This document shows, in pieces, positions 6,761 through 52,380 of a stretch of DNA of 53,240 nt. The translations under genes were made by a program, and so were the position numbers. The notes beneath the pieces were generated by a model, which made no database searches, had not been told where the DNA came from, and was given only the letters and a program-made list of their open reading frames with translations. The first letter of the stretch is position 1. Every line of letters begins with the position of its first letter. Origin of the DNA: Octopus bimaculoides (taxonomy: Eukaryota); assembly GCF_001194135.2 (NCBI RefSeq), contig NC_068986.1:114525398-114578637 (forward strand), written 5' to 3'.

Positions 6761-7190
6761 TATATATAAACGATATATATATAATAATTTTCCCAGAGGA
6801 TGTAGCAACCGTTACCAATATAGCATAAGAACTTACCTTAGGAGAACNNNNNNNNNNNNNNNNNNNNNNNNNNNNNNNNNNNNNNNNNNNNNNNNNNNNN
6901 NNNNNNNNNNNNNNNNNNNNNNNNNNNNNNNNNNNNNNNNNNNNNNNNNNNNNNNNNNNNNNNNNNNNNNNNNNNNNNNNNNNNNNNNNNNNNNNNNNNN
7001 NNNNNNNNNNNNNNNNNNNNNNNNNNNNNNNNNNNNNNNNNNNNNNNNNNNNNNNNNNNNNNNNNNNNNNNNNNNNNNNNNNNNNNNNNNNNNNNNNNNN
7101 NNNNNNNNNNNNNNNNNNNNNNNNNNNNNNNNNNNNNNNNNNNNNNNNNNNNNNNNNNNNNNNNNNNNNNNNNNNNNNNNNNNNNNNNNN

Positions 7191-8108: not shown

Positions 8109-8488
8109 ACACCAACTGGTAAACGTAACCAACACACGAACACAGAGACGCGTAGTTACATACATGTGTATTTGTACGTGTACTATATTCAATTTTACAT
8201 ACATACACACGCACACGTCATTGTACACATGTTGCTGTGTGTATAACAGTATTTCCATTTGAACATTTGCGTGCATGTGCAGGTATGTCATTGCGTATTT
8301 GTGTGTATGTACGTTTATGTAGGAAACTATATGTGCCGGTCTCATGTATAAATGTGTATTGTCTGTATGTACGTGCTGTATACATACAAACATGCATACA
8401 TATCTGTGTGTATACATTATATATATGTGTGTGTATATGTATGTGTATGTCTATACACACATTCTTTTCTTCTTTTATTCATTTACTT

Positions 8489-8659
8489 GTTTCAGTCATT
8501 TGACTGCAGCCATGCTGGAGCACCGCCTTTAGTCGAACTTATTCTTTGTAAGCCCAGTGCTTATTTTAACAGTCTCTTTTGCCGAACGGCTAAGTTACGG
8601 GAACAGGGAACATAAACACACCAACAACAGTTGTCAAGCGATGAGGGTGGGCAAACACA

Positions 8660-8700
<41 letters not shown>
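8489..8700 (-). mobile_element. SINE family A, 3' half
   Basis: GTTTCAGTCATTTGACTGCAGCCATGCTGGAGCACCGCC tail and body match 26788-27000 and 51681-51870; the copy ends in the internal (CA)n. Confidence 0.85.
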
Positions 8701-8731
<31 letters not shown>

Positions 8732-9278
8732 TGAAACGTTAAAGACTTTCTGTATTCCCGAGCGTCAAACTAATACATCCTTTTGTTGTTTACACCACCT
8801 GTCCTCGTCTGTNNNNNNNNNNNNNNNNNNNNNNNNNNNNNNNNNNNNNNNNNNNNNNNNNNNNNNNNNNNNNNNNNNNNNNNNNNNNNNNNNNNNNNNN
8901 NNNNNNNNNNNNNNNNNNNNNNNNNNNNNNNNNNNNNNNNNNNNNNNNNNNNNNNNNNNNNNNNNNNNNNNNNNNNNNNNNNNNNNNNNNNNNNNNNNNN
9001 NNNNNNNNNNNNNNNNNNNNNNNNNNNNNNNNNNNNNNNNNNNNNNNNNNNNNNNNNNNNNNNNNNNNNNNNNNNNNNNNNNNNNNNNNNNNNNNNNNNN
9101 NNNNNNNNNNNNNNNNNNNNNNNNNNNNNNNNNNNNNNNNNNNNNNNNNNNNNNNNNNNNNNNNNNNNNNNNNNNNNNNNNNNNNNNNNNNNNNNNNNNN
9201 NNNNNNNNNNNNNNNNNNNNNNNNNNNNNNNNNNNNNNNNNNNNNNNNNNNNNNNNNNNNNNNNNNNNNNNNNNNNNN

Positions 9279-13073: not shown

Positions 13074-13469
13074 GTATATATATATTCAACTTGTAGTTGT
13101 GCGCCAAAAGCTCCCCACAAACGGTTGCTTAACAATCTAACTATCCTACCACCAACCTAGCTTTAGATTGCAGAATTGCTTAAGATGGGTATTTTTGGTT
13201 GTTTGTTTTTTTTTTTCTTTTTGCACGCACCAACTATGATTTAGATGTCACCTATTGACAGGAACAGTAATCACCAAACGGGTTTCTGTAGCCGTTGAAC
13301 CATTTGGTAATATCAACTCTCGTATTTAAAAATAGTCGGAATGAAACCAGTTTTCTGCATAGAAATATTTTCTTTGTGCCAAAACGTCCGTCTTAAGAAG
13401 TGTCCTCATAGAATAGATTCTGCTCCCAAATTAGGCGACAAGGTGTACCTAATCTCTTCCTTTTGCTTT

Positions 13470-13950
13470 TGCTGGTTTCAACCAAAAACTGCAGCCATGT
13501 TGGGGCACCGTCTTTTGTATAACTGGTTTTACAATTCACATTCACTTCTGAAAAGTTGTTGGACAGAACTGCTCTCCTTTTTGTTTCCTGCCGCAATGTG
13601 GGTTCATCAAGTACTTCAGATAAAAATTTCTCCAAATGTTCTTTGAAAACATTCACATCTACACCTCGTAGATCTCTGAGGTTCTTCGGTAGAATGTTGA
13701 AAGGTTGTGGGCACTTGAAACCTAAGTTGTTTGAATACTGGGTTCTTATTCTAGATGGAGAAGGCGAGATATTTGGTACTATACAAAGGCGTCCGGTTCT
13801 GTGGTTTGTAAATGTTTCAATTCCAAAGTTGGAAGCTGGACCTTTCGGGATCTTTCATATAAATGTACATCACTACATATCTTTCGCGTCTTCTCTCTTG
13901 GGAGTAGAAACTCAATTCTTTTCTCAGTTCACACTCTATAACGGTACATA
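13470..13950 (-). mobile_element. CR1-clade LINE 3' fragment
   Basis: Minus translation with frameshifts: ELSFYSQERRRERYVVMYI..FGIETFTNHRTGRLCIVP..NLGFKCPQPFNILPKNLRDLRGVDVNVFKEHLEKFLSEVLDEP. It parallels ORF 39106-39672 and ends in the shared tail at 13475-13512. Confidence 0.85.
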
Positions 13951-14234
13951 GTTTTTCTTTTTTTTTTTCTTTTCTGCCCCAAACAACCATACCAGGCCTG
14001 TTATGTTTGCATTTGGCGGATGATTTTATAGTGATGTCCCCCCAATATATCTAATGTATGTATGTTTAAAATAACAAGCGTGTTTTTCTGTATCTATCCT
14101 AGTGCAGTCTTTCCTACGGATGGCATTGTATATTGTTTTAGAAACAACAACATGCTGTATTGGAAAGGAGTTCTCTAATAATATTTTTGGGCAGCAGTTA
14201 AAATGTCAGTTATCTTTCACATAACCGGCATTTT

Positions 14235-17988: not shown

Positions 17989-18497
17989 CATCGTCGTCGT
18001 CATCATCATCATCATCATCATCATCAAATTCCTTTAACTAATGCAGCTAGTCATTGTAGTGCCACTCAAGGGGTGCTTTTGCAGTCAGCCCAGCCCACTG
18101 GTCTCTCTTCTTTGTCATGCGTAGCGGGGTCACCGTGTTGTAACCTGCCTTTTTCGCCCTCTCTCAATTGCGTCCCGAAAGAAGGTTTTGGACAAGACGT
18201 TGTGACGGGATGTGTGACCGCCCTACCCAAGCTTTCGTCTTTTTTACCTGCGCAAGGAGTGGTTCATGTCTGCCAGCGTATTTGTTGACCTGCTGCCGGA
18301 CAAAGCTCTTCATTTTCTTTTCTGTGCACTGGATGCTTAGCAGTCTTCTTAAGCACTTGTACCCAAATGTCTGGATTATTCGCTCCATGTCATTTATAAC
18401 AGTCCACCGCTCACACCGGTGCAGTAGGAACGAAGTCACCAGAGACGTGTACATTCGGAGTCTCGTTGGAAATATAATGGGGTTGGCAGCACGCAGC
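17989..18497 (-). mobile_element. RTE-clade LINE 3' end
   Basis: ORF 18164-18454: MYTSLVTSFLLHRCERWTV..ERIIQTFGYKCLRRLLSI..EPLLAQVK resembles the RTE motif LYKSLVLSILLYGCETWT..IQAFENKCLRKLL. (GAT)n tail at 17989-18026. Confidence 0.85.
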
Positions 18498-23284: not shown

Positions 23285-23740
23285 AACAGGACTATATATA
23301 TCACTTGATTGACTGAAAGATATGTTTTCAGTTTTCTTGACATTTGTATGCAATCCAAATTTAGCATCTGCAAACATATTGCTGGGCCACTGATATTCAT
23401 ATACTGTATATGTATAACTATTGGCTACAATATTTTCCATACTATCGTTTCACTAATATTGTACAGACTATAATATACTGTTCCTACGTAACCATTGGTT
23501 ACAATATTTCTTATACCATCATACCATAGTATATTGTAGAGATATTAATATACTGCTGATGTGCAACATCCCATCGTACTTGAAGTATAGTAAGATCATC
23601 AACTGTTGTAAAATGATGTAATGCAATTGCAAACAGGTAAGGTGCAAGCGTATCTCCTTGTAGCACCCCAGCTAGTATTTGAAAGAATTCTGTTTCTCCG
23701 TCACATGACAACACACGACTTCTGGTCACCTCGTAGGTCC
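23285..23740 (-). mobile_element. RTE reverse-transcriptase fragment in inverted orientation, interrupted at 23375-23620
   Basis: 23740 to 23621 translates YEVTRSRVLSCDGETEFFQILAGVLQGDTLAPYLFAIAL. 23374 to 23285 translates ADAKFGLHTNVKKTENISFSQSSDI, the post-catalytic RTE motif GLxxNxKKTE. Confidence 0.85.
23375..23620 (-). repeat. Inverted copy of 19522-19747 (part of the 73-bp minisatellite array)
   Basis: The reverse complement reads GATGATCTTACTATACTTCAAGTACGATGGGATGTTGCACATCAGCAGTATAT...TGAATATCAGTGGCCCAGCAATATG and is colinear with 19522-19747. Confidence 0.92.
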
Positions 23741-23742
23741 TT

Positions 23743-24000
23743 TTAGGTAGTTGGATGAGCAGTTTGGAAGCAGACATCAAGATCAGGAAGGCACAAGCAT
23801 GGACAGCCTGTCACAAACTAAAGAAGGGCTGGAACTCCAAGTTGCCCCAGCAAATCAAAATCAAGCTGTTCACTGCAACTGTCGAATTGATGCTGTGTGA
23901 CAGTGAAACATGGACTCTGACAAAGAAATTATCAAACTGGTTAAATGGATGCTACGGATGGCCCTAAATGTGAAATGGCAACAGCATATGACAAATGACA
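23743..24000 (+). mobile_element. RTE ORF fragment downstream of the RT core
   Basis: LGSWMSSLEADIKIRKAQAWTACHKLKKGWNSKLPQQIKIKLFTATVE..CDSETWTLTKK..RMALNVKWQQHMTN. Confidence 0.88.
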
Positions 24001-24540
24001 AATTTTTGAAAATTTATGAATCTCCCCTCCCCACTTCCAGACCGATTTTCTCCTCTCTTTTTTTCCACAACGCACTTAAAAACAACGGGAGACGCGTTTT
24101 TTTGTACGGACTTTGGCCCTCTTTTTATGCACTACACGCTTAAAATCGATGGAAGAAGCCTTGAAGATTAATAAAATAATCTTGGAAAATCAGCGATCAC
24201 CATTACAATCACCACTTCCTTTATTTTCAATCAGAAAATGAAACATAATTTTAATACAATNNNNNNNNNNNNNNNNNNNNNNNNNNNNNNNNNNNNNNNN
24301 NNNNNNNNNNNNNNNNNNNNNNNNNNNNNNNNNNNNNNNNNNNNNNNNNNNNNNNNNNNNNNNNNNNNNNNNNNNNNNNNNNNNNNNNNNNNNNNNNNNN
24401 NNNNNNNNNNNNNNNNNNNNNNNNNNNNNNNNNNNNNNNNNNNNNNNNNNNNNNATTATGCGGTGGTCCATTGTTGATTTAAGCAACAACAACAAAATTC
24501 TGCAATTTAAATTTTTAACTCCTACTCCGCACCAAGCGAG

Positions 24541-26787: not shown

Positions 26788-27178
26788 GTTTCAGTCTTTT
26801 GACTGCGGCCATGCTGGAGCACCGCCTTTAGTCGAAGAAATCGACCCCAGGACTTATTCTTTGGAAGCCTAGTACTTATTCTATCGGTCTCTTTTGCCGA
26901 ACCACTGAGTTACGGGGACATAAACACACCAGCATCGGTTGTCAAGCGATGTTGGGGGGACAAACACAGACATACAAACACACACACACACACACACATA
27001 TATATACACATATACGACGGGCTTCTTTCAGTTTCCGTCTACCAAATCCACTCACAAGGCATTGGTCGGCCCGAGGCTATAGTAGAAGGCACTTGCCCAA
27101 GATGCCACGCAGTGGGACTGAACCCGGGACCATGTGGTTGGTAAGCAAGCTACTTACCACACAGCCACTCCTACGCCT
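26788..27178 (-). mobile_element. SINE family A (tRNA head, CORE-like segment, internal microsatellite, CR1-type tail), near full length
   Basis: Minus head GGCGTAGGAGTGGCTGTGTGGTAAG..GGTTCAGTCCC, then ATCTTGGGCAAGTGCCTT, and tail GGCGGTGCTCCAGCATGGCCGCAGTCAAAAGACTGAAAC. Confidence 0.9.
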
Positions 27179-27201
27179 ATACAGCCACTCCCACGCCTAT
27201 G

Positions 27202-27240
<39 letters not shown>

Positions 27241-27404
27241 GTATGCATATACATATATATATGTATGCATGTATATGCATGATCATCGTTTAACGCCCAC
27301 TTTCCATGCTGGCAATATATATATATAATATACATATTTCTTTTTTTTTTTCATTTATATCAAAGAAATCGTTATTATTATTATTGTTATTATTATTTTT
27401 CAGA

Positions 27405-27630
27405 GCAGGGGATAAGCAGAATCGTTAGAACGTGGGAAGAAACGCCTTAAGCAATGGCTTGCGGCATTTCTTTTGGCTCTTTCCTATCAGAATTCAAGTC
27501 AGGCTAATCTCAGCATTGCTTTTATTCTTTCGGGGACGATGAAATAAAGTACCAGTCAAATAGTAGGGGCCCAAGATAACAACCAACTCCTCTACTCAAA
27601 GATTACTGATCATTTGGTTAAACTAGAAAG
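27405..27630 (+). mobile_element. Degenerate SINE family D copy
   Basis: AAGCAGAATCGTTAG head and TTCTTTCGGGGACGATGAAATAAAGTACCAGTC body. Confidence 0.65.
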
Positions 27631-27975
27631 AATTACTGTTATGCACGCACAAACACACACACACTCACGCACAGACATATATATATATATATATATATAT
27701 ATTTTATTTTATTTAAAAGAGTTCCAACTCTGTCTGTTCTTTATGTTTTTTATTTATATTCTTGTAAAATTTATGTGGGATATAGAATATGGAATATATA
27801 ATATATAATATAAAAAAAGATGGATGGTACAATGAAATGAAGTATTGAATGTCTTATTGAATATATGGAATATGTCTTATTGAATATATGAAATATTGAG
27901 TGTTCAATATAAAGGATTAAATATATAAATATATAAAGGCGAATACGTATTTTCTATACCTTGTGGTATTTCATC

Positions 27976-28042
27976 ATGGCCGGTATGACAGACTGTAACA
28001 GACTGCTTGTTACAGTCTGTTACAGTCTGTCATACCGGCCAT
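27976..28042. other. Perfect 30-bp inverted repeat with a 7-nt loop
   Basis: ATGGCCGGTATGACAGACTGTAACAGACTG-CTTGTTA-CAGTCTGTTACAGTCTGTCATACCGGCCAT; 30/30 pairs checked by hand. Confidence 0.97.
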
Positions 28043-28104
28043 ATATATATGTGTGTGTGTGTGATATGTATACATGGTAGACATGTACAGATAGATAGAT
28101 ATAA

Positions 28105-28430
28105 TGGTGTAGAAAAGCATGGCTTAGTGGTTGGGGTGTTGCACTTATCGCAAGATTGTGGTTTCCATTCCGGGTATGGGCGATACATTATATTCTTATG
28201 CAAAACACTTCATTTAATGCTGCTCTTGTCCCGTTCAATGTGAGGAATATATAAGCAACAGAATGCGGGAAAGCTGGCCTCGTGAGTCTATGACTCAGCA
28301 GGGACTCTGATCCTCTGATATAGAAGGGCACAGCTTACATACACTGACTCGCATCCGCGCATACGACGAAGTATTTGTTTTGTGGATTATGTAGTGGACT
28401 ACCCAACAGGCGTGTAAGAAGACGCATATC
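28105..28430 (+). mobile_element. Old tRNA-derived SINE
   Basis: GCATGGCTTAGTGGTT (A-box-like), GGTTTCCATTCC (B-box-like) and ATTCTTATGCAAAACACTT, similar to the family C head. Confidence 0.5.
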
Positions 28431-28490
28431 TAAGTATGCATGTAAGTGTTGTGTGTTTGTGTATGTCTGTGTACATGTATAGACGTATAC

Positions 28491-28526
<36 letters not shown>

Positions 28527-28971
28527 ATATATATACGTATTTATATATATATGCATATATATTCATATATATATATTCATATATATGCATTTCTGACATT
28601 TGCTTAGTAACTACAAGTCCCGCCTCTAACAACAGCTTCACCACACTATACCCATTGTACTGTTGTCTCTCTACTCTAGATACCTTCCACCTACCACCAA
28701 CACAACCAGGTGTCTTGCATCATTCTACTCCATACAAGTCATACTGCCTCAATTAATAACTGGTATTAGTAGCAGAGGTGATTATGGTGGTGGGATACTT
28801 GTTATGGTTTATGGCGACGGTGGTGCTGAGGCGGCAGAGGTGATGATAATGTGGTGATGATCATGATGATGCTAGTTATTGTGGTGAAGGTGGCGGTGGT
28901 GGTAGTGATGGAGGTGGTGGTGGTAGGGAGTGCTTTGTAAAATTTAATTACGTCATTTTACGTCATTACTC

Positions 28972-29190
28972 ATTGCTGGCCACTGCTTAAACTAGCCAAT
29001 CAGAATTTATACTTTGGAGATTTATGCACACCAAAAGAGGATGAGGGCCACTAACTACATAGACGTGATCGGCAGACACACAACTTGAAACTGAGGACGA
29101 ATCAAAGTTAATGGGGGACAGAAAATCATGGTTCGATGTGGTGAAATGGATCTTGATTTCGGCCGCTTCAAGAAAACTGTATTAGTAGTC
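28972..29190 (+). mobile_element. RTE ORF C-terminal fragment
   Basis: With frameshifts: IAGHC..ILWRFMHT..DTQLETEDESKLMGDRKSWFDVVK, resembling the RTE end FAGHC.R..LWEP.HG..GRP..YID.L..DTGL...M.DR..W. Confidence 0.65.
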
Positions 29191-29702
29191 GTGAGCTTAA
29201 TGGTGGCGGCGGTGGTGGCGGTGGTGGTGACGTCTGCAGCGGCAGCAGTGTTGTAGAGTGGTAGAGTTATTTACAAAACAAAAAAAAAAACAGTATTGTT
29301 ATTGATATAATTATCCACCTCTACACAGCCCTTATCAACATTGCCGCCACCACCACCACCCTTAATCTACCCACTCCCTATGCCCTCCCACCCTCACCTT
29401 ACTACACACAATGTCTTTCCTGTGCAAGACATTTTGCTCACAGCTCTCAGAACAATGGTCAGTGTCTCGAGAAATGATGTGACGTCGACAGCGCTGGTCG
29501 GTGGTAATGGTGGAGGCGATGATGTCGTAGTTGACATCAGGATTATAGTGACGTCGGCAGTGGTGATGGCAATGGTGCTGATGCTGATGACAGAGTTGAA
29601 TGGTCGTGGTGGTAGATGTGATGGATGTGGTCATTATAGTGGTGAGGTGGTGATTGTGACTATAGTGGTGTTGTTGGCAAGGTTGATTACGTGTACTAAG
29701 TG

Positions 29703-29754
<52 letters not shown>

Positions 29755-29946
29755 AACACACTCACACACACACATGTATATACTTATACACACACATACA
29801 TATGCAGTGACTTCGCTATATACACTAGTTAGTACATATCACCTACACATACACATTACCGATTATAACAATCTCTCATTCACTATTTAAATGTGAGACG
29901 CAAATAGTGTCAAAAACATAAAAATACATATATAGATACATACACT

Positions 29947-29990
<44 letters not shown>

Positions 29991-30257
29991 CACACACACA
30001 CACACACATACGCAGAAAGTCGATTTTCCAACATGGCCTTGGCTGAAAAGACAAAAATAAACGAAAGAACTTAAGAACAAAGAACATACACACACACATA
30101 TATGACATAGGTATATAAACATGAACACACGCACACACAAGCACACACCCATACAAGCACACACACACACACACACACACATACATACATACATACATAC
30201 ATACATACATACATACATACATAAATATATGCATACATATAGACATAGATACACATA

Positions 30258-30399
30258 GGCGTGGTTGTGTTTTAAGAGGTTTGCTTCACAACTATACGGT
30301 TCTAGGTTCAGTTCCACTGCCTGTCTTCTACTATAGCCTTACGCCGACAAAAGCCTTGTGAGCGGATCTGGTTGACAGGAACTGAAAGAACCCTGTCAT

Positions 30400-30473
<74 letters not shown>

Positions 30474-30890
30474 ACACACACACACACACTCACACACACA
30501 CACACACACACACATGTATATACATATAGACATATACATATATATTTGCCTCTATGTACATGCATACATGTGTGAGTGTGTGTATACATATAGATGTATG
30601 CACGTGTGTGCATACATATATATATATGTGTGTGTGTGTGTGTGCGTGTGTGTGTGTGTGCGCGTGTGTGTGTGCTCGCGTGCGTGTGTGTGTGTATGTC
30701 TGTGTATGTCTGTATTTGTCCCCCACCAACGTTTGATAACTTGTGTTGGTTTGTTTATGTCCCCGTAACTTAGCGGTTCTGCAAAAAGTCCCAATAGAAC
30801 AAGTATCAGGTTTAAAAACATAAGGTCGATTGATTCAACTAAATTTCCTCAAGGCGATGCACCAGCATGGCCGAAGTCTAATGACTGAAA
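30258..30890 (+). mobile_element. SINE family A with an internal (CA)/(TG) tract expanded to ~300 bp
   Basis: Head GGCGTGGTTGTG..GGTTCAGTTCC, body GTCCCCGTAACTTAGCGGTTC, tail CCAGCATGGCCGAAGTCTAATGACTGAAA. Confidence 0.85.
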
Positions 30891-31319
30891 AAAAAAGATA
30901 AAATATAAAAGGTACATATTACATATACTACATATACATAGATACTCATATACATACATAAATATATGTATACACATACATACACACACATACACAAATA
31001 GACACATTCATACACTAACATACACACAGACAGCGCACTCATGCACGCGTGTTTACGTGGTGGAAGTCGACTGATGTCCGAATACCACAACTTCTTAAAT
31101 ACAGTTGGCATCTCTTAGGGAACAGCAACAACGGAACAAGTCTTTGCGCGTGTAACTGAAACATGTAAATATATAGACAAATGGACATATATATATGCAT
31201 ACATACACATATGCAAATATACTATACACATACACATACTGATATCCACACACAAGTGCACATATATGAACGTATAAAACCTACCTATCTGCCTACACAC
31301 GCACACACATACACACATA

Positions 31320-31432
31320 TACATACATACATACGTACATACATACATACATACATACATACATACATACATACGTACATACATACATACATACATACAT
31401 ACATACATACATACATACATACATACATACAT
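31320..31432. repeat. (ACAT)n tetranucleotide microsatellite
   Basis: Visible directly. Confidence 0.95.
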
Positions 31433-31499
31433 AGGCCTGGATATGTCCTGAAAATTTTAGTATAAAGTGTTGCCTATGTTAGACTGATGACCATTGTCA

Positions 31500-32105
31500 C
31501 GTCCTTTCTCTCAGATTATGCTTCTGCTACCCGAGGACAAGGGATTGCTAACAAATTGCCAAATGATCACAAGAGACAGCGAATCCCTTTAACACCCAAA
31601 ATGCAGTCGAAAATGTCTTCTGTGGAAGATATAATACATGTGATCGGTAGCTGCCTCTAAACATTATGATGTTCCCTTTTAATGTGAAATGATGTTGCCA
31701 AAACAATAAACAGTAATATTGAGAAAGTCTACAATGGGATAAATATAGAGAATAACTCTGCCATTGAATATACCATGTATTAACGCAATTGCTATTACCA
31801 TCGAGACTTCCATGAGTTGCGAACCAATTGCAAATATATAAAGGTCAACTTCCTGTACAGGTGAATATTTCTTTCGAAATCAGTGAGAGAGAATATTTAC
31901 ATACAACTGCTTCAAAGCCTATTGTTTCTTTATTTAAACTTTAAAAATCCCATAATTATAATTATTCATGCACTCGGCTATGATAGCAAATGTTTCAGTA
32001 GTAAGCACAAACAATAGAGCTTTCAAAGAAAGTTACCACTTAATGGTCATTTTATAAATATAATTTGTAAGCGGAACTGTAAATATACGCAAGAATTCTA
32101 AAATT
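31500..32105 (+). mobile_element. Degenerate RLE-type non-LTR retrotransposon (R4/Dong-like) C-terminus
   Basis: Frameshifted motifs in the expected order: SSVEDIIHVIGSC..NDVAKTI (CCHC knuckle region), FPVQVNISFEISE, PIIIIIHALGY, VSGTVNIRK. The catalytic PD motif was not recognisable. Confidence 0.65.
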
Positions 32106-34567
32106 CAACATGGTACACTTATACATAACTTCTTAAATTCAGCAAAGTTTTTTTTTTTCATGAGAGGAAGCATTGAAATATTTAGACAATATATATTCAC
32201 ACATTCATTCGTTCATCCATGCACAAATGATGATTATCTACTCATATCCAAAGAACATAAGTATGTAAGCAACGGTCTATCCAGAACTATGTTTTGATTA
32301 TCGGGCAGGTCATTCAGCATGCTAGAAACAAAAGGTAGGACCTCTCACGAATAACACATTACGCTATCAAGAAGTAAAGAAATGTCTAAGATGAGATTTA
32401 GAGACATTACAGCTAAAACATTAAAGAAAAAAACGATAATCAGAGAATATCTTCCGTTATAGCTCTCTCCTGTTATGGTTCACATAGAGCTAAACAACAA
32501 GACCGACAACATATGTGTGCTTCGTTTACCCGTGTGCACCATATGCAGAAAGGAGCGTATATATGGTAATAGTTTTAGGTTATGAATATATGAGAAGTAT
32601 GTTCACTGATGTATGCTTCCTTGCAATGTGTTTGTGATTGTGACCTAGTGTGCATGAGTGTATTTAAGCGACTTTGTATATACTCACGCGTGTATATATA
32701 TAAATATATACACACATACATACATGTATACACACACACATATATATATATATATATACATATAGTATACATACACATAACATATACACACATACGCATG
32801 TGTAATTAAATGTATTGGTGTGTGTGTGTATACATACATACACATGCATATTTGTATGTGTACAAATGTATATAGAGGTATATAACTTTATCGATGTCTA
32901 TTTTAGTGTTCACAACCGCTTGTGAGTCACCAATAAAATCATTCTGTACTTCTTGGAGTATTGAGTAATTAATTCTGAAGGTGAAAGCTTTTTGTTACAA
33001 ACAACCACACACTATATATACAAGTATGCATAGAAACATACATACTTGCATACACACACATACNNNNNNNNNNNNNNNNNNNNNNNNNNNNNNNNNNNNN
33101 NNNNNNNNNNNNNNNNNNNNNNNNNNNNNNNNNNNNNNNNNNNNNNNNNNNNNNNNNNNNNNNNNNNNNNNNNNNNNNNNNNNNNNNNNNNNNNNNNNNN
33201 NNNNNNNNNNNNNNNNNNNNNNNNNNNNNNNNNNNNNNNNNNNNNNNNNNNNNNNNNNNNNNNNNNNNNNNNNNNNNNNNNNNNNNNNNNNNNNNNNNNN
33301 NNNNNNNNNNNNNNNNNNNNNNNNNNNNNNNNNNNNNNNNNNNNNNNNNNNNNNNNNNNNNNNNNNNNNNNNNNNNNNNNNNNNNNNNNNNNNNNNNNNN
33401 NNNNNNNNNNNNNNNNNNNNNNNNNNNNNNNNNNNNNNNNNNNNNNNNNNNNNNNNNNNNNNNNNNNNNNNNNNNNNNNNNNNNNNNNNNNNNNNNNNNN
33501 NNNNNNNNNNNNNNNNNNNNNNNNNNNNNNNNNNNNNNNNNNNNNNNNNNNNNNNNNNNNNNNNNNNNNNNNNNNNNNNNNNNNNNNNNNNNNNNNNNNN
33601 NNNNNNNNNNNNNNNNNNNNNNNNNNNNNNNNNNNNNNNNNNNNNNNNNNNNNNNNNNNNNNNNNNNNNNNNNNNNNNNNNNNNNNNNNNNNNNNNNNNN
33701 NNNNNNNNNNNNNNNNNNNNNNNNNNNNNNNNNNNNNNNNNNNNNNNNNNNNNNNNNNNNNNNNNNNNNNNNNNNNNNNNNNNNNNNNNNNNNNNNNNNN
33801 NNNNNNNNNNNNNNNNATAATAGTATGCTAATTCTTCCTAAAATCCTCTTTCTGCCCTCCTGTCGTGTGCAGCTCCTCAATTTCTGTCTTTTCAATCCTT
33901 ATCAACATCTCTCTCTCTCTCTCTCTCTCTCTTATTCTTTCACTCTTCTGAAACCTCTCACTCTACTCTCTATCCCTTTCTTCAACCACTTGTAAGATTA
34001 ACAAGAAATATATGCCTGTTGTTCGTGCTTTATTGCCGCATACCGCACACCTCCTCTCCACCACCACCATCACATAACACCACATACCACCACACACAGT
34101 CACTATTTGCCACCATCACCACATATGACCGCCATGTGCATACCACTACATATCACGATCACCACTACATCATGAAACCACCACGACATACCACCACCAC
34201 TACTCAACGTACTAGAGAAAACAGCCAAATATTCTTCATATCTCATCTTGCCACGTTAAAAAAAAAAAAGAAACTAGATTTCTTGCACATTAGAAAGGGT
34301 GGGTGGTCACGACTGGAATGTCTGTTTGATCGGTGTTGACCTGAGTAGTTGTGGTAGCTGTGATAGTGGTGGCAGCCGTGCCACAAACAACCATCATCAC
34401 TACCACACCACCACTACGCCACCACTTTCACAACAACCATCACTACCACACTACGAGACAACCATGACTACTGCCATCATCGTCAGCTCTCCTTTAAAAG
34501 GTCACTCGCTTCTTATTCCAAAGAAAATCTTCATGTTATACAAAACAGGTGCGTGTGAAAGTGTACC

Positions 34568-34611
<44 letters not shown>

Positions 34612-35745
34612 NNNNNNNNNNNNNNNNNNNNNNNNNNNNNNNNNNNNNNNNNNNNNNNNNNNNNNNNNNNNNNNNNNNNNNNNNNNNNNNNNNNNNNNNN
34701 NNNNNNNNNNNNNNNNNNNNNNNNNNNNNNNNNNNNNNNNNNNNNNNNNNNNNNNNNNNNNNNNNNNNNNNNNNNNNNNNNNNNNNNNNNNNNNNNNNNN
34801 NNNNNNNNNNNNNNNNNNNNNNNNNNNNNNNNNNNNNNNNNNNNNNNNNNNNNNNNNNNNNNNNNNNNNNNNNNNNNNNNNNNNNNNNNNNNNNNNNNNN
34901 NNNNNNNNNNNNNNNNNNNNNNNNNNNNNNNNNNNNNNNNNNNNNNNNNNNNNNNNNNNNNNNNNNNNNNNNNNNNNNNNNNNNNNNNNNNNNNNNNNNN
35001 NNNNNNNNNNNNNNNNNNNNNNNNNNNNNNNNNNNNNNNNNNNNNNNNNNNNNNNNNNNNNNNNNNNNNNNGATAGATAATGTGTGTGCGCGCGCGTGTG
35101 TGTGTGTATGTATGTTTGTGTATGTGTGTACATGTGTTGGAGTAATGAAAAAAGCAAAACGATTTAAAGCACACATACACGCAAACACACACAAGTGCGT
35201 GCACACGTATGCACCCGCTCATGCGTATTTTGATATATGCTTTTGTGTGTGCGTGAGTGCGTTTTAAATCGTTTTGCTTTTTTCAGTACTTCAACACATG
35301 TACACACACATACACAAACATCGAGATTGCTTCTTAGTATCAATAATGCTTCTGTCGTTATTTTTTAATATGCCCACTGGCTATATATATATATATATAT
35401 ATGTCCTCATCATCATCATTTAATGCACGTTTTCCATGCTGGCACGGGCTGGACGTTTGTTATTCCGCTGGTGACTAATAAGCTCAACTCTTAATAGACA
35501 TACACGTCCGTGGATATTGCAGGCGAAACTCACCCCATTCGCTACAACGGCAGCGCGTTTTCGAGCAACTCACTTAAGCTTGGCATGGAAAATGCATGTT
35601 TCTTCATAAACACCTATTTCTTTCTTTACTTGTTTCTTCCATTGACCTGCCATATCTCACACGCCTTCAACGAGAATTCTCTACAATCCTTAAACCGTAG
35701 TCTTCTTACACACACAAACACACACACAGTCACCCTTTTTATTAT

Positions 35746-36052
35746 GAGTGGCTGTGTGGTAAGTAGCTTGCTTACCAAGCACATGTTTCCGGGTTCAGTC
35801 CCACTGCGTGACACCTTGGGCAAGTGTCTTCTACTATAGCCTCGGACCGACCAGTATATATATATATGTATATGTTTGTGTGTCCGTGTTTGTCCCTCCA
35901 CTATCGCTTGGTGTGTTGACGTCCCCGTAACTTAGCGGTTCAGCAAAAGAGATCGATAGAATAAGTACCAGGCTTACAAAGAATAAGTCCTGGGTCGATT
36001 TGTTCGACAAAAGGCGGTGCTCCAGCATGGCCGCAGTCAAATGACTGAAACA
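35746..36052 (+). mobile_element. SINE family A, with a deletion after the CORE-like segment
   Basis: A box TGGCTGTGTGG (35749-35759), B box GGTTCAGTCCC (35792-35802), ACCTTGGGCAAGTGTCTT (35813-35830), tail 36013-36051. Confidence 0.9.
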
Positions 36053-36070
36053 TAAGGATGTATATATATA

Positions 36071-36545
36071 CAGGGTGCGGTGAATAAACTGCTGTCTAAA
36101 TTACGCAAAAATGAAAATAACACTGACACCTCATTTTAACAGATATATCAATATTACATTAAAATATCTTGAAATACTAAAGAGTAAAATTATTCCATAA
36201 AATCGCCATTGGCTTCAACCACGGCTTCCAGACGACTTCGGGATGTCCTGTAACTCTCCTGGGCTGTCTCCTTGTTTAAGTTGGCAAATGCTGCCATAAT
36301 CCTTGCCTTCAGTTCATCTTATGGTATTACAAGGAGTTTTGTTGGTCTCTCGCTAAATTGCGCCCCACACATAATAATCAAGGAGTTTGCAGTTTGGGGA
36401 GTTAGGTAGCCAGATGTTAGAGGTGATGTGGTAGCAGAAATTGTCTGACAGACATGACTGGTTGCTCCTGCTTGTGTGACATGGTGCAGAGTCCTGTTCC
36501 CAGACATAGGGTCTTCCACGATTCTTTGCAATGAACAAGTTAAAT
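36071..36545 (-). mobile_element. Tc1/mariner-superfamily transposon 3' end (transposase C-terminus plus TIR)
   Basis: YVWEQDSAPCHTS..WLPNSPNCKLLDYYVWGAI..DELKARIMAAFANLNKE..RLEAVVEANGDFME* matches QQDSAPCH / WPPNSPDxNPLDY. The terminus TA|CAGGGTG lies at 36071. Confidence 0.85.
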
Positions 36546-36999
36546 AACAGCTATTTAAAAATCTTTACACACACACACACACAAGCACACACAGAGGCGT
36601 GCGTGTGTATGTGCGTGCTAAAAAATCTTCACCTTTTATAAAATAGTTACTTACTATTCATATCGTAGAGTTGCTCTAACTCATAAATATAGAAGAATGG
36701 CTGCCTAACATATCCCTGTAATGGAGGACTGAGACGCTAACTGGGGTAGCGTATCGTATGGTGGTTAAGTAGCTGCCAAATTGCCAGCGATTCTCTTGAG
36801 ACATAACAGGAGATTAGTGTGTCAAGCTTATCCAACAAAATGACATTATATTTGTTAATTAGTTTAATTCATTCAGAGGCCACTATTTTGTAAACCGTAA
36901 CAGGGTAGCCCGGTAATCGATAGATACGAGGTGGACACCAGTAGTCGGATGCTTTGTTTTTTCTCAGCTGCACTTGCAGGAGTCTTGGAATTCTCTGTT

Positions 37000-39051: not shown

Positions 39052-40849
39052 AGTTTCAGCTTAGAGCTGTGGCCATGCTGGAGCACCGCCGTTTTGCTAC
39101 AGTTTTTACTGAGATCCTCCTCTAATATGTGGCACTTGGAGAAGAATGGAGTTTGTTGTAGCTACTCTTATTTGCACCTCTTGCTGTGAGGTAGGTTCAT
39201 CTGGGACTCGCAACAGGAAGAGCTCCAGCCTTGATTTGAAAATGCCTAAATCCACATTGTTCAGGACCATCAGTCTGTTTGGGAGAATATTAAAAAGCAG
39301 TGGGCCCCTGAAACCCAGGCTGTTGCAGTAACTGGTCCTGAAGTGCGATGGCATTGCTGGGATCTTTGGGACTGTGCAGTGGCGACCCGTTTTGGCATTG
39401 CTGTAGCTTTCAATGCCAAAATTTGGCACAATTCCTTCTAGGATCCTCCAGACGTATACTACTGCATACCTCTCTCGCCTTCGCTCCAGGGTGTGAAGAC
39501 TCAGCTCTTTCAGCATTTCCCAGTAGCTGAGCTGTTGCAATGAGACGATCTTTTTTGTGAAGCTTCGTTGGATTGCTTCAAGGTCTGCTGTTAATTTTGC
39601 ACTGTTGGGTGACCATAGTTGGGAGCAGTAATCCAGGTGGCTGAGAACGAATGTCTTCCAGGGGATCATCATGTTTCATTTTCTCTGGTTCTGAATGCTC
39701 TCAGTATCCAGCCAGCCAGTCGTGTGCACGTTGTCGCTATTTTGTTAATGTGCACTTGGAAAGAGGTATCACCACTCATGTCGATACCTAGGTCCCTCAC
39801 TGATTTAGGCTCTGGGATTGTAACTCCCTGTGGACCAGTGGACCCTGTAAGTTTCATGTTCAGTTTTGGACACTGATAGCGCAGGGCTTGGAATTTTTGA
39901 GCATTAAACTGCATATTATTATCCTCAGCCCATCTGTATTCCATCGTAACTGCCTCGCTGGTTATAGGTAAGGCGGCAAAGAAATCCACTGCTTCGTTCA
40001 TTTGTCTGTGTTCCAACGGGGTGGTGAAGACACTTTTGAACTGTTCATTCAGTACCTCACTGATCTTGGTTGGACTATCTGTGAGGGAGCCATCCTTTTC
40101 GAAGAGGGCTCCTATCTTGCAGCGTACTAAAGCTGTTTCTTTCGCATAATGAAAGAAGGCTTTTCGGTTTGACTTAATGTTTTTTTATAAGTGAGGCTTC
40201 TTTGTCTGCTCTCTCCCTCACATAGGATTGTTGCAGGCTTTTTTCAATCTCCATCAGTGTTGTTTTAGGCGGGATCTTTCACTACTTTTGGAACGTTGGT
40301 TGAGGCGATTTGCCACCTTCGTCCGTCGTCTCATGACGATCTTCCCCTCCCTTGGAATCGTGTTCCTTTTTGTGTTGGCCTTGTGCTCTGGGACATATTT
40401 CTGGCAAATGGTTTGCATAACAGATATGAAATAGTCTAGTTTCATGCCAATGTCTGGTGTGGAGAGACATTTCGGCCAGTCCTGTCTGCGGATCTCTTTT
40501 TCATCGATTCCGAGTCTGCTTTGTGGAAGTACAGATTGGAGAGATTTTGGATGCTTCCTTTAGGCTGTATGTCTTTGGCTACTATCGGCCCAAACATAGA
40601 CAGCTCTATTATGTTGTGATCCGAGACTAATGTCGGTGTCACTTTCGCATCATGAACGATGTCCATAGTGTTTGTGAAGCAGAGATCCAAAATGTTATTC
40701 GCCCTAGTTGGTCTGAGCACAACTTGCTCCATGAATAGGGCATTGGTGAGTTTGAACAGGAACTCCACCTGTGCTTGTTTGCAATGAGTCATACCTGAGA
40801 GTATGAGGCCTTCGGGCCATTTGACGTTGGGGAAATTGAAATCACCCAT
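39052..40849 (-). mobile_element. CR1-clade LINE ORF2 remnant: APE C-terminus, linker and post-RT domain, with the RT core deleted; 5' part lost in a gap
   Basis: GDFNFPNVKW..LDLCFTN..SDHNII (APE motifs), KAFFHYAK, NEQFKSVFT, then RWAEDNNMQFNAQKF..RDLGI..SHLDYCSQLWSP..LERRRER..FLLRVPDEP. The 3' tail is at 39053-39090. Confidence 0.93.
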
Positions 40850-41874
40850 ATATATATATATATATATATANNNNNNNNNNNNNNNNNNNNNNNNNNNNNN
40901 NNNNNNNNNNNNNNNNNNNNNNNNNNNNNNNNNNNNNNNNNNNNNNNNNNNNNNNNNNNNNNNNNNNNNNNNNNNNNNNNNNNNNNNNNNNNNNNNNNNN
41001 NNNNNNNNNNNNNNNNNNNNNNNNNNNNNNNNNNNNNNNNNNNNNNNNNNNNNNNNNNNNNNNNNNNNNNNNNNNNNNNNNNNNNNNNNNNNNNNNNNNN
41101 NNNNNNNNNNNNNNNNNNNNNNNNNNNNNNNNNNNNNNNNNNNNNNNNNNNNNNNNNNNNNNNNNNNNNNNNNNNNNNNNNNNNNNNNNNNNNNNNNNNN
41201 NNNNNNNNNNNNNNNNNNNNNNNNNNNNNNNNNNNNNNNNNNNNNNNNNNNNNNNNNNNNNNNNNNNNNNNNNNNNNNNNNNNNNNNNNNNNNNNNNNNN
41301 NNNNNNNNNNNNNNNNNNNNNNNNNNNNNNNNNNNNNNNNNNNNNNNNNNNNNNNNNNNNNNNNNNNNNNNNNNNNNNNNNNNNNNNNNNNNNNNNNNNN
41401 NNNNNNNNNNNNNNNNNNNNNNNNNNNNNNNNNNNNNNNNNNNNNNNNNNNNNNNNNNNNNNNNNNNNNNNNNNNNNNNNNNNNNNNNNNNNNNNNNNNN
41501 NNNNNNNNNNNNNNNNNNNNNNNNNNNNNNNNNNNNNNNNNNNNNNNNNNNNNNNNNNNNNNNNNNNNNNNNNNNNNNNNNNNNNNNNNNNNNNNNNNNN
41601 NNNNNNNNNNNNNNNNNNNNNNNNNNNNNNNNNNNNNNNNNNNNNNNNNNNNNNNNNNNNNNNNNNNNNNNNNNNNNNNNNNNNNNNNNNNNNNNNNNNN
41701 NNNNNNNNNNNNNNNNNNNNNNNNNNNNNNNNNNNNNNNNNNNNNNNNNNNNNNNNNNNNNNNNNNNNNNNNNNNNNNNNNNNNNNNNNNNNNNNNNNNN
41801 NNNNNNNNNNNNNNNNNNNNNNNNNNNNNNNNNNNNNNATATATATAAATGTATATACATAAATGTGTGTGTGT

Positions 41875-42653
41875 ATGATGGCTGCAAATGCCATATATTA
41901 TGTGCCCGATCTGTCTGAACTCAAATGTCTGAACTCATAAGGCATCTATCGTGATGCCCACTTGTCAGGTCGAGATTGTAGCCAAAGGATGCTAATCGCC
42001 ACTCTTCACGAGTAAAATGCCTGCAGTCCAATCTGACTTGTCGTAGCTCCTATGTTTCATGTTCTCCGGAGCGGACGTTTGGCTGCGTTACTTTGAAGCT
42101 CTTAAATGGTCTTTTCTATCGGCTTGAGACTCCAGCCTTTCTCGTTTCTCTTTTGGAGTCTCGTGTTTCGTCAACCGTCGTTTCTGCTTTAGTGTCTCTT
42201 GCTCCCTCAACTGGATGATTGCCTGTTTATTTCAAACTGAAGCTTTAATCTCGTTGCTTTGTGTCTCCACGGCATTTCATTGTCTCCGAGATTGGAGCCT
42301 GTCCTACATTTCTGCTTGTGTTTCCCTAGCCCTTCGACTTCTGGGGCACCGGGCTTCAGATGGTTGAAAAGTATTATATTGTCTTCTATGCATCATATTG
42401 AATGTTCTAAAGTAAAATATCTAAAAAATCAAAAATAAATCTCGTAACATTCAATTCAGTCATTGTTATTTCTAGATTCAATCAGGTGGCTTTATTTCAT
42501 CCAACTACGAAACTTCATAAAAATCGGTGCGGTATGACAATTACACCTTTTATAGATATCACCAAACTTCACTTCACAAACCGAAAAATGCGATTGCCTC
42601 AAATCATAGCACATTTAACACAAGCGATATTCAAATTACGATATAGTAGAAGA
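41875..42653 (-). mobile_element. Helitron 5' fragment (RepHel N-terminus)
   Basis: Start TCTTCTACTATATC at 42653, a charged repeat EQETLKQKRRLTKHETPKEKRERLE, then WRLASFGYNLD..QIGHIIYGICSHH. This resembles the Helitron N-terminal ETPEEREARL / AFxYxP / IGxMxxxCxHC region. Confidence 0.6.
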
Positions 42654-43599
42654 CTTCATATATATATATATATANNNNNNNNNNNNNNNNNNNNNNNNNN
42701 NNNNNNNNNNNNNNNNNNNNNNNNNNNNNNNNNNNNNNNNNNNNNNNNNNNNNNNNNNNNNNNNNNNNNNNNNNNNNNNNNNNNNNNNNNNNNNNNNNNN
42801 NNNNNNNNNNNNNNNNNNNNNNNNNNNNNNNNNNNNNNNNNNNNNNNNNNNNNNNNNNNNNNNNNNNNNNNNNNNNNNNNNNNNNNNNNNNNNNNNNNNN
42901 NNNNNNNNNNNNNNNNNNNNNNNNNNNNNNNNNNNNNNNNNNNNNNNNNNNNNNNNNNNNNNNNNNNNNNNNNNNNNNNNNNNNNNNNNNNNNNNNNNNN
43001 NNNNNNNNNNNNNNNNNNNNNNNNNNNNNNNNNNNNNNNNNNNNNNNNNNNNNNNNNNNNNNNNNNNNNNNNNNNNNNNNNNNNNNNNNNNNNNNNNNNN
43101 NNNNNNNNNNNNNNNNNNNNNNNNNNNNNNNNNNNNNNNNNNNNNNNNNNNNNNNNNNNNNNNNNNNNNNNNNNNNNNNNNNNNNNNNNNNNNNNNNNNN
43201 NNNNNNNNNNNNNNNNNNNNNNNNNNNNNNNNNNNNNNNNNNNNNNNNNNNNNNNNNNNNNNNNNNNNNNNNNNNNNNNNNNNNNNNNNNNNNNNNNNNN
43301 NNNNNNNNNNNNNNNNNNNNNNNNNNNNNNNNNNNNNNNNNNNNNNNNNNNNNNNNNNNNNNNNNNNNNNNNNNNNNNNNNNNNNNNNNNNNNNNNNNNN
43401 NNNNNNNNNNNNNNNNNNNNNNNNNNNNNNNNNNNNNNNNNNNNNNNNNNNNNNNNNNNNNNNNNNNNNNNNNNNNNNNNNNNNNNNNNNNNNNNNNNNN
43501 NNNNNNNNNNNNNNNNNNNNNNNNNNNNNNNNNNNNNNNNNNNNNNNNNNNNNNNNNNNNNNNNNNNNNNNNNNNNNNNNNNNNNNNNNNNNNNNNNNN

Positions 43600-51037: not shown

Positions 51038-51675
51038 TACATATATAAAAATAAACAGATAAACAGACATCTGTCTCTGGGACGTCTTCAGTGAGAAGAA
51101 TAACGCTTTTTTAATACCATCTTCGCTGGAATAGTTTATGTTGATCAAATTCTATAAGAGTTGTTTTAGTTTTCTTACACATTTTTATCAGGATCGGAAG
51201 GGCACTATTCTTGACCCTTAGGGTTTCCGAGAAGGCTGAAAGAAAGAAGGTTATTCTTAGAGAAGTGACCTGCTCCGAAAGCTTCAACAGAGTTGGGCTC
51301 TGTTAAAGTCTACAACCATCATCCCCAAAAAATGCTTCAAAATTTGGTGGCGGGGAGTTGCCTGCTGCGATCCTATGGATATTTCACATTGAAACATCAC
51401 AGGTTTATACTGAGTAACCTTATTTTACACGCACACACACACATACACTTGTACGTTTCGTTTTATAAGCGAAAGGAAAGAATTTTCTTATTAGTTGAGA
51501 CTGCACAAGAGTGTCTCGAGCGCCGATTATTTCGTGCCAAGGCATTTGTCAAAGATTTGTCATGTGCCTTGACACAAAGTTCTAAGACCTTGACTCATAT
51601 ACACGCATATATACTAAACAACCACATTATACATACATATATATATACACATACAGACATACACACTTTTACTTT

Positions 51676-52046
51676 TACTTGTTTCAGTCATTTGACAGCA
51701 GCCATGTTGGAGCACCGCCTTTAGTCGAACAGATCGACCTCGGGAGTTATTCTTTGTAAGCCTAGAACTTACTCTATCGGTCTCTTTTGCCGAACCGCTA
51801 GCTTACGGGGACGTAATCACGCCAACATCGGTTGTCAAGCGATGGTGGAGGGAACAAACACAGACACAGACACACAAATACATACATATACACGACGGGC
51901 TTCTTTTAGACTCCGTCTACCAAATCCATACACAAAGCTTTCGTCGGCCTGAGGCGATAGTAGAAGACATTTGCCCAAGGTGCCACGCAGTGGGACTGAA
52001 CACGGAACCATGTGGTTCGGAAGGAAGCTTCTTACCACACAGCCAC
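51676..52046 (-). mobile_element. SINE family A, near full length
   Basis: Same head, CORE-like ACCTTGGGCAAATGTCTT, body and tail as 26788-27178. Confidence 0.9.
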
Positions 52047-52380
52047 ATACATACATACACACACACACATATATATATATATACACATATATATATATAC
52101 ATACATACATACATACATACATACATACATACATACATACATACTATATATATTAACACTCCACATCCGGTGCAGCATGTTTACTTCATATATTCCTAGT
52201 TGTCGAAAATCCATTGCGTTCAAGGCCCTGTTTCGCTACCAAGCAGCAACTCATTTAGTAGATAAGCATCATACAACTACACTTTTAATCAGCCATCTGG
52301 GGCATTTAGAAGAGAATACATCGCATTTATCCTTAACTGCTACGCATACACACGTATATATGTGTGTGAATACATGTATA

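What the first reader, a model, noticed from the sequence alone, without database searches (positions are those of the whole stretch)
27976..28042. Perfect 30-bp hairpin with internal 10-bp repeats
Seen: a 67-nt palindrome with 30/30 pairs and a 7-nt loop, GC-rich relative to its AT-rich flanks. The arms contain the 10-mer TTACAGTCTG (two full copies on the right, one full and one partial complement on the left), so slipped alternative folds are possible. It is bounded by AT on both sides. Perfect symmetry in an otherwise decayed region implies recent origin, arm-to-arm correction or selection. Inference: a Dicer/Drosha or ADAR substrate, a transposon collapsed to its TIRs, or the terminal palindrome of an unrecognised element that includes the AT-rich 27760-27975 segment.
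Basis: partly seen in the sequence, partly recalled or inferred. Interest (0 to 1): 0.7.

Follow-up and report, generated by a model that had tools for sequence, protein, structure and literature searches.

The report
Perfect 30-bp hairpin in octopus DNA
A flawless 67-base inverted repeat sits in repeat-filled non-coding octopus DNA; it is real in the sequence, but it is most likely a young one-off copying accident rather than a gene or a mobile element.

Summary
Window 27976-28005 and 28013-28042 are exact reverse complements (30/30) around the 7-nt loop CTTGTTA. No other non-microsatellite perfect hairpin in the 53 kb has arms longer than 12 bp.

The window is a gap-ridden octopod scaffold full of SINEs, LINE fragments and (CA)n/(TA)n microsatellites. 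The arm occurs nowhere else in the window or in the one 20-kb Octopus vulgaris locus I could fetch. It has no target-site duplication, no Rfam match at threshold, and complementarity stops abruptly at both ends.

A 10-bp tandem (TGTTACAGTC x2) runs from the right arm into the loop. This marks loop plus right arm as the source and the left arm as its reverse-complement copy.

My best explanation is a single template-switch or fold-back copying event (confidence 0.55), younger than most surrounding repeats and probably without function. The rivals are a transposon-related palindrome, a small-RNA or ADAR hairpin, and an assembly artefact.

A new detail: the AT-rich left flank ends, 3 nt inside the palindrome, in CATGATGAAATACCACAAGG. 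That is 18/20 identical to the Drosophila P-element terminus.

Copy number, orthologous state and expression could not be tested, because no octopus whole-genome or read data were reachable.

The parts
27976..28005 (+). Left arm of the palindrome (ATGGCCGGTATGACAGACTGTAACAGACTG). Inferred to be the reverse-complement copy.
   Evidence: It lacks the continuation of the 10-bp tandem into the loop (read).
28006..28012 (+). Loop CTTGTTA, asymmetric. Its last 5 nt (TGTTA) belong to the first TGTTACAGTC unit.
28013..28042 (+). Right arm, the exact reverse complement of the left arm. With the loop it is inferred to be the ancestral source block.
28008..28032 (+). 10-bp tandem (TGTTACAGTC)x2 followed by TGTCA. 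It spans the loop/arm boundary.
   Evidence: Read. TTACAGTCTG copies are at 28010 and 28020.
27959..27978 (-). Transposon-like terminus CATGATGAAATACCACAAGG, 18/20 identical to the Drosophila P-element head. It overlaps the palindrome by 3 nt.
   Evidence: The P head sequence is as printed in PMC9682801.
27703..27958 (.). AT-rich segment (GC 0.22) with a 23-bp tandem at 27849-27896. It may be the interior of the element that ends at 27978, or degenerate AT-rich DNA.
   Evidence: No other copy in the window.
27640..27702 (.). (CA)n(TA)n compound microsatellite on the left.
28043..28062 (.). (TA)n(TG)n microsatellite starting immediately after the right arm. It is the mirror image of the left microsatellite.

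Best explanation
The hairpin is a young, single-event inverted duplication made by template switching (fold-back copying) during DNA replication or repair.

The ancestral DNA held the block CTTGTTACAGTCTGTTACAGTCTGTCATACCGGCCAT (loop plus right arm), lying next to an (AT)n microsatellite. A nascent strand left its template, copied 25-30 nt of this block in reverse complement, and then returned to its template. The fold-back was possibly primed by the short self-complementarity GACTG/CAGTC around the present loop. The return was at or near the ATG of the neighbouring CATG terminus.

The product is a perfect 30-bp stem with a 7-nt loop. The stem is perfect because it is recent, not because it is maintained. 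It most likely has no function; it can extrude as a cruciform in DNA, or form dsRNA if it is ever transcribed.

Shown: the perfect symmetry, the uniqueness, the sharp edges, and the asymmetry of the 10-bp tandem. Inferred: the direction of copying, the microhomologies, and the lack of function.
For: (1) 30/30 pairs with abrupt loss of complementarity outside (1 of the next 6 positions pairs). The next best non-repetitive perfect hairpin in 53 kb has 12 bp.

(2) The 10-bp tandem TGTTACAGTC is present twice on the right only if 5 nt of the loop are included. The left arm lacks the matching extension. A 5-nt continuation by chance is about 1 in 1000. So loop plus right arm is one contiguous older block, and the left arm is a copy that starts exactly at the stem.

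(3) The arm is single-copy in the window at up to 3 mismatches and by low-stringency BLAST. It is absent at up to 8 mismatches from a 20-kb O. vulgaris locus.

(4) There is no target-site duplication (read).

(5) Zero changes in 60 paired sites bound divergence since origin to under about 0.05 per site (95%, my arithmetic). SINE copies in the window and in O. vulgaris differ by 5-25%.

(6) The mechanism and scale are documented. Single template switches create perfect stems, for example a 28-base event, and more than 6000 hairpins in primates (PMC10710096).

(7) The hairpin is inside a gap-free block 1.2 kb from the nearest gap. Its arms are well below usual short-read lengths (read length is my general knowledge; the assembly's reads are not known here), so reads could span it.
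Against: The ancestral (hairpin-free) state was not seen. No orthologous or allelic sequence could be fetched, so the event is inferred from one sequence.

Genome-wide copy number is unknown. A low-copy element family would look identical in a 53-kb window.

The left arm abuts a transposon-like terminus (27959-27978). This could mean the palindrome is tied to transposon activity rather than to ordinary replication.

The argument from the 10-bp tandem rests on 5 nucleotides.
Confidence: 0.55

Rival explanations
1. The palindrome is transposon-derived. It could be a minimal non-autonomous element reduced to two 30-bp terminal inverted repeats. It could be the terminal or subterminal hairpin of an unrecognised element that includes the AT-rich segment. 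It could also be a fold-back repair product made when the neighbouring P/hAT-like element end was cut.
For: The structure is by definition a pair of 30-bp inverted repeats.

The adjacent minus-strand sequence CATGATGAAATACCACAAGG is 18/20 identical to the P-element head printed in PMC9682801. It ends 3 nt inside the palindrome.

The hairpin is compositionally foreign to the AT-rich segment.

The window carries LINE endonuclease and RT fragments (for LINE relatives). From memory only, it also carries a mariner-like transposase remnant at 36356-36550.
Against: No direct repeat of 2, 3, 4 or 8 bp flanks the palindrome apart from the self-complementary AT.

There is no second copy of the arm in the window or in L011.

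There is no partner for the P-like terminus within the window at up to 5 mismatches, and the 8-mer next to it (GCCGGTAT) recurs only inside the hairpin itself.

Exact searches for the arm and for the terminus found nothing in the JGI metagenome collection. The arm was also absent from the viral collection. These collections probably hold no octopus DNA.

A palindrome made by opening a flank hairpin would have no asymmetric loop (established hAT/V(D)J chemistry).
Confidence: 0.22
2. The hairpin is a functional RNA element: a young miRNA or endogenous short-hairpin siRNA precursor, or an ADAR editing substrate inside a transcript. This concerns function and could coexist with a template-switch origin.
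For: The RNA hairpin is very stable (-57.4 kcal/mol).

Template-switch hairpins are known raw material for new miRNAs (PMC10710096).

Octopods have expanded miRNA sets and heavy A-to-I editing (my general knowledge, not tested).
Against: No Rfam family reaches its gathering score. The sub-threshold matches go to several unrelated miRNA models on both strands, as expected for any long stem.

The 30-bp stem and 7-nt loop, with no basal extension, fall outside the preferred pri-miRNA geometry (flank pairing).

There is no sign of an exon or an annotated gene within 10 kb (both searches were insensitive).

No expression data are available.
Confidence: 0.07
3. The palindrome is an assembly or gap-closing artefact of a short-read scaffold next to a microsatellite and does not exist in the animal.
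For: The window is a draft scaffold with 17 N runs, most of them flanked by microsatellites. The right arm abuts an (AT)n(TG)n tract. No independent assembly or read set could be consulted.
Against: The hairpin lies 1.2 kb from the nearest gap inside a 6.3-kb gap-free block. The whole structure (67 nt) is shorter than a typical read and the arms (30 nt) are shorter than usual assembly k-mers (general knowledge). The loop is a non-palindromic 7-mer that continues the tandem repeat of the right arm, which an arbitrary mis-join would not produce.
Confidence: 0.07

Closest known systems
Template-switch mutations (short-range intrastrand or interstrand switches; quasi-palindrome to palindrome conversion), as in PMC10710096 and PMC7954356
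   Same: A reverse-complement copy sits right next to its source. The stem is perfect, made in one step. The size matches documented events (for example 28 nt). Boundaries are sharp, microhomology at the switch points is possible, and no target-site duplication is present.
   Different: In the published cases the event is inferred from parent and child sequences on a phylogeny. Here no ancestral sequence is available, so direction and extent rest on the asymmetry of a 10-bp tandem.
MITEs and foldback elements (non-autonomous DNA transposons made mostly of inverted repeats)
   Same: Two long inverted repeats with a very short interior, and short tandem repeats within the arms, as in foldback elements.
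   Different: No target-site duplication, no further copy found, and arm ends without a recognisable superfamily signature. At 67 bp it would be unusually small.
Animal pre-miRNA / endogenous short-hairpin RNA
   Same: A stable stem-loop of roughly the right order of size.
   Different: The stem is fully perfect, the loop is only 7 nt, there is no basal stem, no family match at threshold, and no evidence of transcription.
P-element (P superfamily) terminal inverted repeat
   Same: The 20 nt ending at 27978 on the minus strand match the P head CATGATGAAATAACATAAGG at 18 positions.
   Different: This is a solo terminus. There is no partner repeat, no 8-bp duplication and no transposase nearby. 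Similarity stops after about 21 nt, the host is a cephalopod, and the hairpin itself is not P-like.

Membership tests
Template-switch-derived inverted repeat | Reverse-complement copy lying next to its source, with identity at or near 100% | tested here: met
   30/30, 7-nt spacer
Template-switch-derived inverted repeat | Complementarity ends abruptly at the switch points and is not a decayed longer palindrome | tested here: met
   1 of the next 6 outward positions can pair. The flanks fold on their own.
Template-switch-derived inverted repeat | Ancestral or outgroup sequence lacks the copy and is explained by a four-point switch | not testable with these tools
   No octopus genome or read collection was reachable. 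Protein-based routes failed.
MITE / TIR-only DNA transposon | Terminal inverted repeats | tested here: met
   Trivially met by the palindrome
MITE / TIR-only DNA transposon | Target-site duplication flanking the repeats | tested here: not met
   The flanks are ...TTTCATC | and | ATATATAT.... The only match is the self-complementary AT, which is also part of the stem.
MITE / TIR-only DNA transposon | Multiple dispersed copies in the genome | tested here: inconclusive
   No second copy in the 53-kb window or 20 kb of O. vulgaris. This sample is far too small to bound genome copy number.
Animal miRNA precursor | Match to a curated family at its gathering score | tested here: not met
   0 matches at gathering. 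The best sub-threshold match is mir-192, 31.8 against 54 bits.
Animal miRNA precursor | About 35-bp stem with an apical loop of >=10 nt and single-stranded basal flanks | tested here: not met
   30-bp stem, 7-nt loop. The criterion is from PMC10710096.
Animal miRNA precursor | Phased ~22-nt reads from both arms | not testable with these tools
   No small-RNA data available
P-superfamily transposon (for the left-flank element) | Terminus resembling known P termini | tested here: met
   18/20 to the P head printed in PMC9682801
P-superfamily transposon (for the left-flank element) | Second, inverted terminus and a 7-8-bp target-site duplication | tested here: not met
   No partner at up to 5 mismatches in the window. 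GCCGGTAT occurs only inside the hairpin.
P-superfamily transposon (for the left-flank element) | Multiple copies, or an autonomous partner encoding a THAP/P transposase | not testable with these tools
   No octopus genome search was possible. No such ORF was seen in the window (by eye only).
Helitron 3' end | Short hairpin about 10 nt upstream of a CTRR end, inserted between A and T | tested here: not met
   No CTRR follows the hairpin on either strand

The most novel reading that the evidence does not exclude
The hairpin is the working end of an undescribed cephalopod mobile element, or a template-switch-born hairpin already expressed as a lineage-specific small RNA. In the first case, the P-like terminus plus an adjacent 30-bp perfect hairpin would form a conserved terminal module used in transposition or strand transfer.
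Probability: 0.06. Interest if true: 0.55.

Novelty: new member of a known kind. Interest (0 to 1): 0.25.

Why it matters
If the main reading holds, this is one more example, in a mollusc, of template switching producing a ready-made perfect hairpin in one step. That is the raw material proposed for new miRNA genes, so it is useful as a data point but not surprising.

It would matter more in two cases. The first is if the hairpin is transcribed in a lineage known for miRNA expansion and RNA editing. The second is if the P-like terminus next to it marks a real P/hAT-like family in cephalopods whose ends carry or induce such palindromes.

Tried and rejected
(1) Resemblance of loop plus right arm to the 3' end of the abundant SINE (ATGGCCG ... 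GACTGNAACAAG). A local-alignment score of 20 is reached by 12% of shuffles, so I dropped it.

(2) Exact scans of public collections with the arm. Metagenomes gave 0 and viral contigs gave 0. Prokaryotic genomes gave 2 hits for a 20-mer, about the number I estimate by chance (my arithmetic from the collection size and a 20-mer), neither of them a hairpin. The P-like terminus gave 0 in metagenomes. A degenerate 18-base version gave 8 hits in viral contigs, which I take to be chance matches of an AT-rich pattern (not inspected).

(3) A six-frame composite protein query over the hairpin and its flank found no hit. The database holds no ORFs from octopus non-coding DNA, so this negative says nothing about copy number.

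(4) I tried to reach the orthologous O. vulgaris locus with a 4353-aa composite of all non-repetitive ORF segments within 10 kb. No hit at E <= 1e-6.

(5) Literature search for the arm sequence found no paper.

(6) Rfam at gathering and at E <= 10 gave nothing above threshold. ARAGORN found no tRNA.

(7) Helitron end, hAT flank-hairpin footprint and P excision footprint models were each considered. I rejected them because of the missing CTRR, the asymmetric 7-nt loop, and the absence of a second TIR remnant.

(8) Slipped alternative folds are real but about 39 kcal/mol less stable.

Full report
**What is there.** The sequence at 27976-28042 reads ATGGCCGGTATGACAGACTGTAACAGACTG / CTTGTTA / CAGTCTGTTACAGTCTGTCATACCGGCCAT.
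- The two 30-nt arms are exact reverse complements. They are the only matches to the arm in the window at up to 3 mismatches, and no shuffle gave a match.
- The 67-mer folds at -57.4 kcal/mol as RNA and -37.1 kcal/mol as DNA (z = -17).
- An exhaustive scan for perfect stems with loops up to 20 nt ranks it first. Everything else of 13 bp or more is (TA)n microsatellite, and the best non-repetitive stems have 11-12 bp.
- Complementarity stops at once outside the arms. The flanks do not pair with each other in the predicted fold.

**Context.** The window is a draft eukaryotic scaffold.
- It has 17 N runs, most of them flanked by microsatellite tracts, and a very heavy (CA)n/(TA)n load.
- It has several copies of one SINE (26788-27195, about 35640-36060, about 8470-8800, about 51670-52060, about 30850).
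- It has LINE fragments, including an endonuclease domain (Pfam Exo_endo_phos_2).
- A LINE ORF finds a protein of Octopus vulgaris. The O. vulgaris locus around that protein carries the same SINE at 75-88% identity. The source is therefore an octopod; I had also recognised the SINE from memory.
- The hairpin lies in a gap-free block (26788-33063), 1.2 kb from the nearest gap.
- Its neighbours, left to right, are a (CA)n(TA)n tract (27640-27702), an AT-rich segment (27703-27975, GC 0.22) with a 23-bp tandem, the hairpin (GC 0.48), then (TA)n(TG)n (28043-28062), and about 50 nt further a sequence that looks like a degenerate tRNA-derived SINE head. The last identification is from memory; ARAGORN finds no tRNA.

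**Internal anatomy.**
- On the plus strand the unit TGTTACAGTC occurs twice in perfect tandem at 28008-28027, followed by TGTCA. The first unit begins 5 nt inside the loop.
- The left arm carries the complement of only the part that lies in the stem.
- Loop plus right arm is therefore one contiguous older block, and the left arm is a reverse-complement copy that begins exactly where the stem begins.
- A 5-nt continuation by chance is about 1 in 1000.
- The slipped registers that the tandem allows are about 39 kcal/mol less stable than the full stem.

**Tests of the transposon reading.**
- No direct repeat of standard length flanks the palindrome.
- No other copy exists in the window at low stringency or in the 20-kb O. 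vulgaris locus at up to 8 mismatches.
- A possible relation to the SINE 3' end did not survive a shuffle test.
- One new feature did turn up. On the minus strand, the AT-rich segment ends in CATGATGAAATACCACAAGG (27978 to 27959). This matches the Drosophila P-element head CATGATGAAATAACATAAGG, as printed in PMC9682801, at 18 of 20 positions.
- That terminus has no inverted partner in the window. The 8-mer next to it recurs only inside the hairpin.
- It overlaps the palindrome by 3 nt, so the hairpin is essentially outside that putative element. The hairpin is also compositionally distinct from it.

**Tests of the RNA-gene reading.**
- No Rfam family reaches threshold.
- With permissive settings the stem attracts weak matches to several unrelated miRNA models on both strands. 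The best is 31.8 bits against a threshold of 54, which is what any long stem would do.
- The geometry (30 bp, 7-nt loop, no basal stem) is short of the preferred pri-miRNA form (PMC10710096).
- Expression cannot be tested here.

**External searches.**
- Exact-pattern scans of viral, metagenome and prokaryote collections gave nothing beyond two prokaryotic hits, about the number I estimate by chance, neither of them a hairpin.
- The protein collection contains annotated O. vulgaris genes and metagenome ORFs, but no ORFs from octopus non-coding DNA.
- My composite six-frame queries over the hairpin and over everything within 10 kb returned nothing. These negatives say nothing about copy number.
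- The orthologous locus could not be reached.

**Interpretation.** Five facts together point one way.
- The stem is perfect with sharp edges.
- There is no target-site duplication.
- No second copy was found.
- The source/copy asymmetry is clear.
- The arm length is typical of documented events.

Together these fit a single template-switch (fold-back) copying event, the mechanism shown to create perfect stems in one step (PMC10710096).

Zero changes at 60 paired sites imply less than about 0.05 substitutions per site since the event (95%, my arithmetic). That is younger than most neighbouring SINE copies, which differ by 5-25%.

The short GACTG/CAGTC complementarity around the loop, and the ATG shared with the neighbouring CATG terminus, are plausible microhomologies for the two switches. 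This is inference.

I put this reading at 0.55. A transposon-linked origin gets 0.22, a functional RNA hairpin 0.07 (not exclusive of the origin), and an assembly artefact 0.07; the rest is unassigned.

**Verdict.** This is a real and locally unique structure with an ordinary most-likely explanation. It is a new instance of a known kind, of low to moderate interest unless genome-wide copies, conservation or expression are found.

Noticed in passing
window 27959-27978 (minus strand): CATGATGAAATACCACAAGG is 18/20 identical to the Drosophila P-element terminus. It is a solo end with no partner or duplication in the window. It may mark a P/hAT-like element in an octopod, or it may be coincidence in AT-rich DNA.
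   Followed up: partly
window 27640-27702 and 28043-28062; also 30402-30713: There are mirror-image compound microsatellites, (CA)n(TA)n ... (TA)n(TG)n. The hairpin and the AT-rich segment sit at the centre of one. A similar (AC)n...(TG)n pair lies 2.4 kb downstream. Such palindromic microsatellites might favour fold-back events.
   Followed up: no
window 26788-27195(-), ~35640-36060(+), ~8470-8800(-), ~51670-52060(-), ~30850(+): There are at least five copies of one SINE, with an internal (TG)n(TA)n tract and the 3' end ...CATGGCCGCAGTCAAATGACTGAAACAAG(TAAAAG)n. The same family is present in O. vulgaris chromosome OX597824.1 (L011) at 75-88% identity.
   Followed up: partly
window 28118-28190 (+): The sequence has tRNA-like A and B box motifs (TGGCTTAGTGG ... 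GGTTTCCATTCC) and looks like the head of a second, tRNA-derived SINE. ARAGORN calls no tRNA, and no other copy is in the window.
   Followed up: no
window 39106-41887 (-), 13400-13951, 18167-18496 (-), 23514-24140: These are LINE fragments. An endonuclease domain has a Pfam hit at threshold, and C-terminal ORFs have relatives (up to 64% identity) in marine metagenome contigs and in O. vulgaris. One element is interrupted by a 968-nt N run.
   Followed up: partly
window 36356-36550 (-): An ORF segment reads ...WEQDSAPCHTS...NSPNCKLLDYYVWG. From memory it looks like the C-terminal catalytic region of a mariner/Tc1 transposase. Pfam gave no significant hit.
   Followed up: partly
window, 17 N runs (e.g. 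6848-7190, 8813-9278, 40871-41838, 42675-43599): Most assembly gaps are bordered by microsatellites such as (TA)n. This shows a short-read scaffold that breaks at microsatellites. Seven gaps are exactly 10 N.
   Followed up: no
window 27849-27896: A 23-bp unit, ATGTCTTATTGAATATATGGAAT, is repeated twice in tandem (96% identity) inside the AT-rich segment left of the hairpin.
   Followed up: no
L001 1640-1659 and L002 6968-6987: The 20-mer GGTATGACAGACTGTAACAG occurs once each in a Pirellulales and a SAR202 genome, in non-hairpin sequence. Read in the frame in which the shared 20-mer translates as GMTDCN (not tested as a gene), the two flanks look alike. Two hits is about what I estimate by chance for 596 Gb.
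   Followed up: partly
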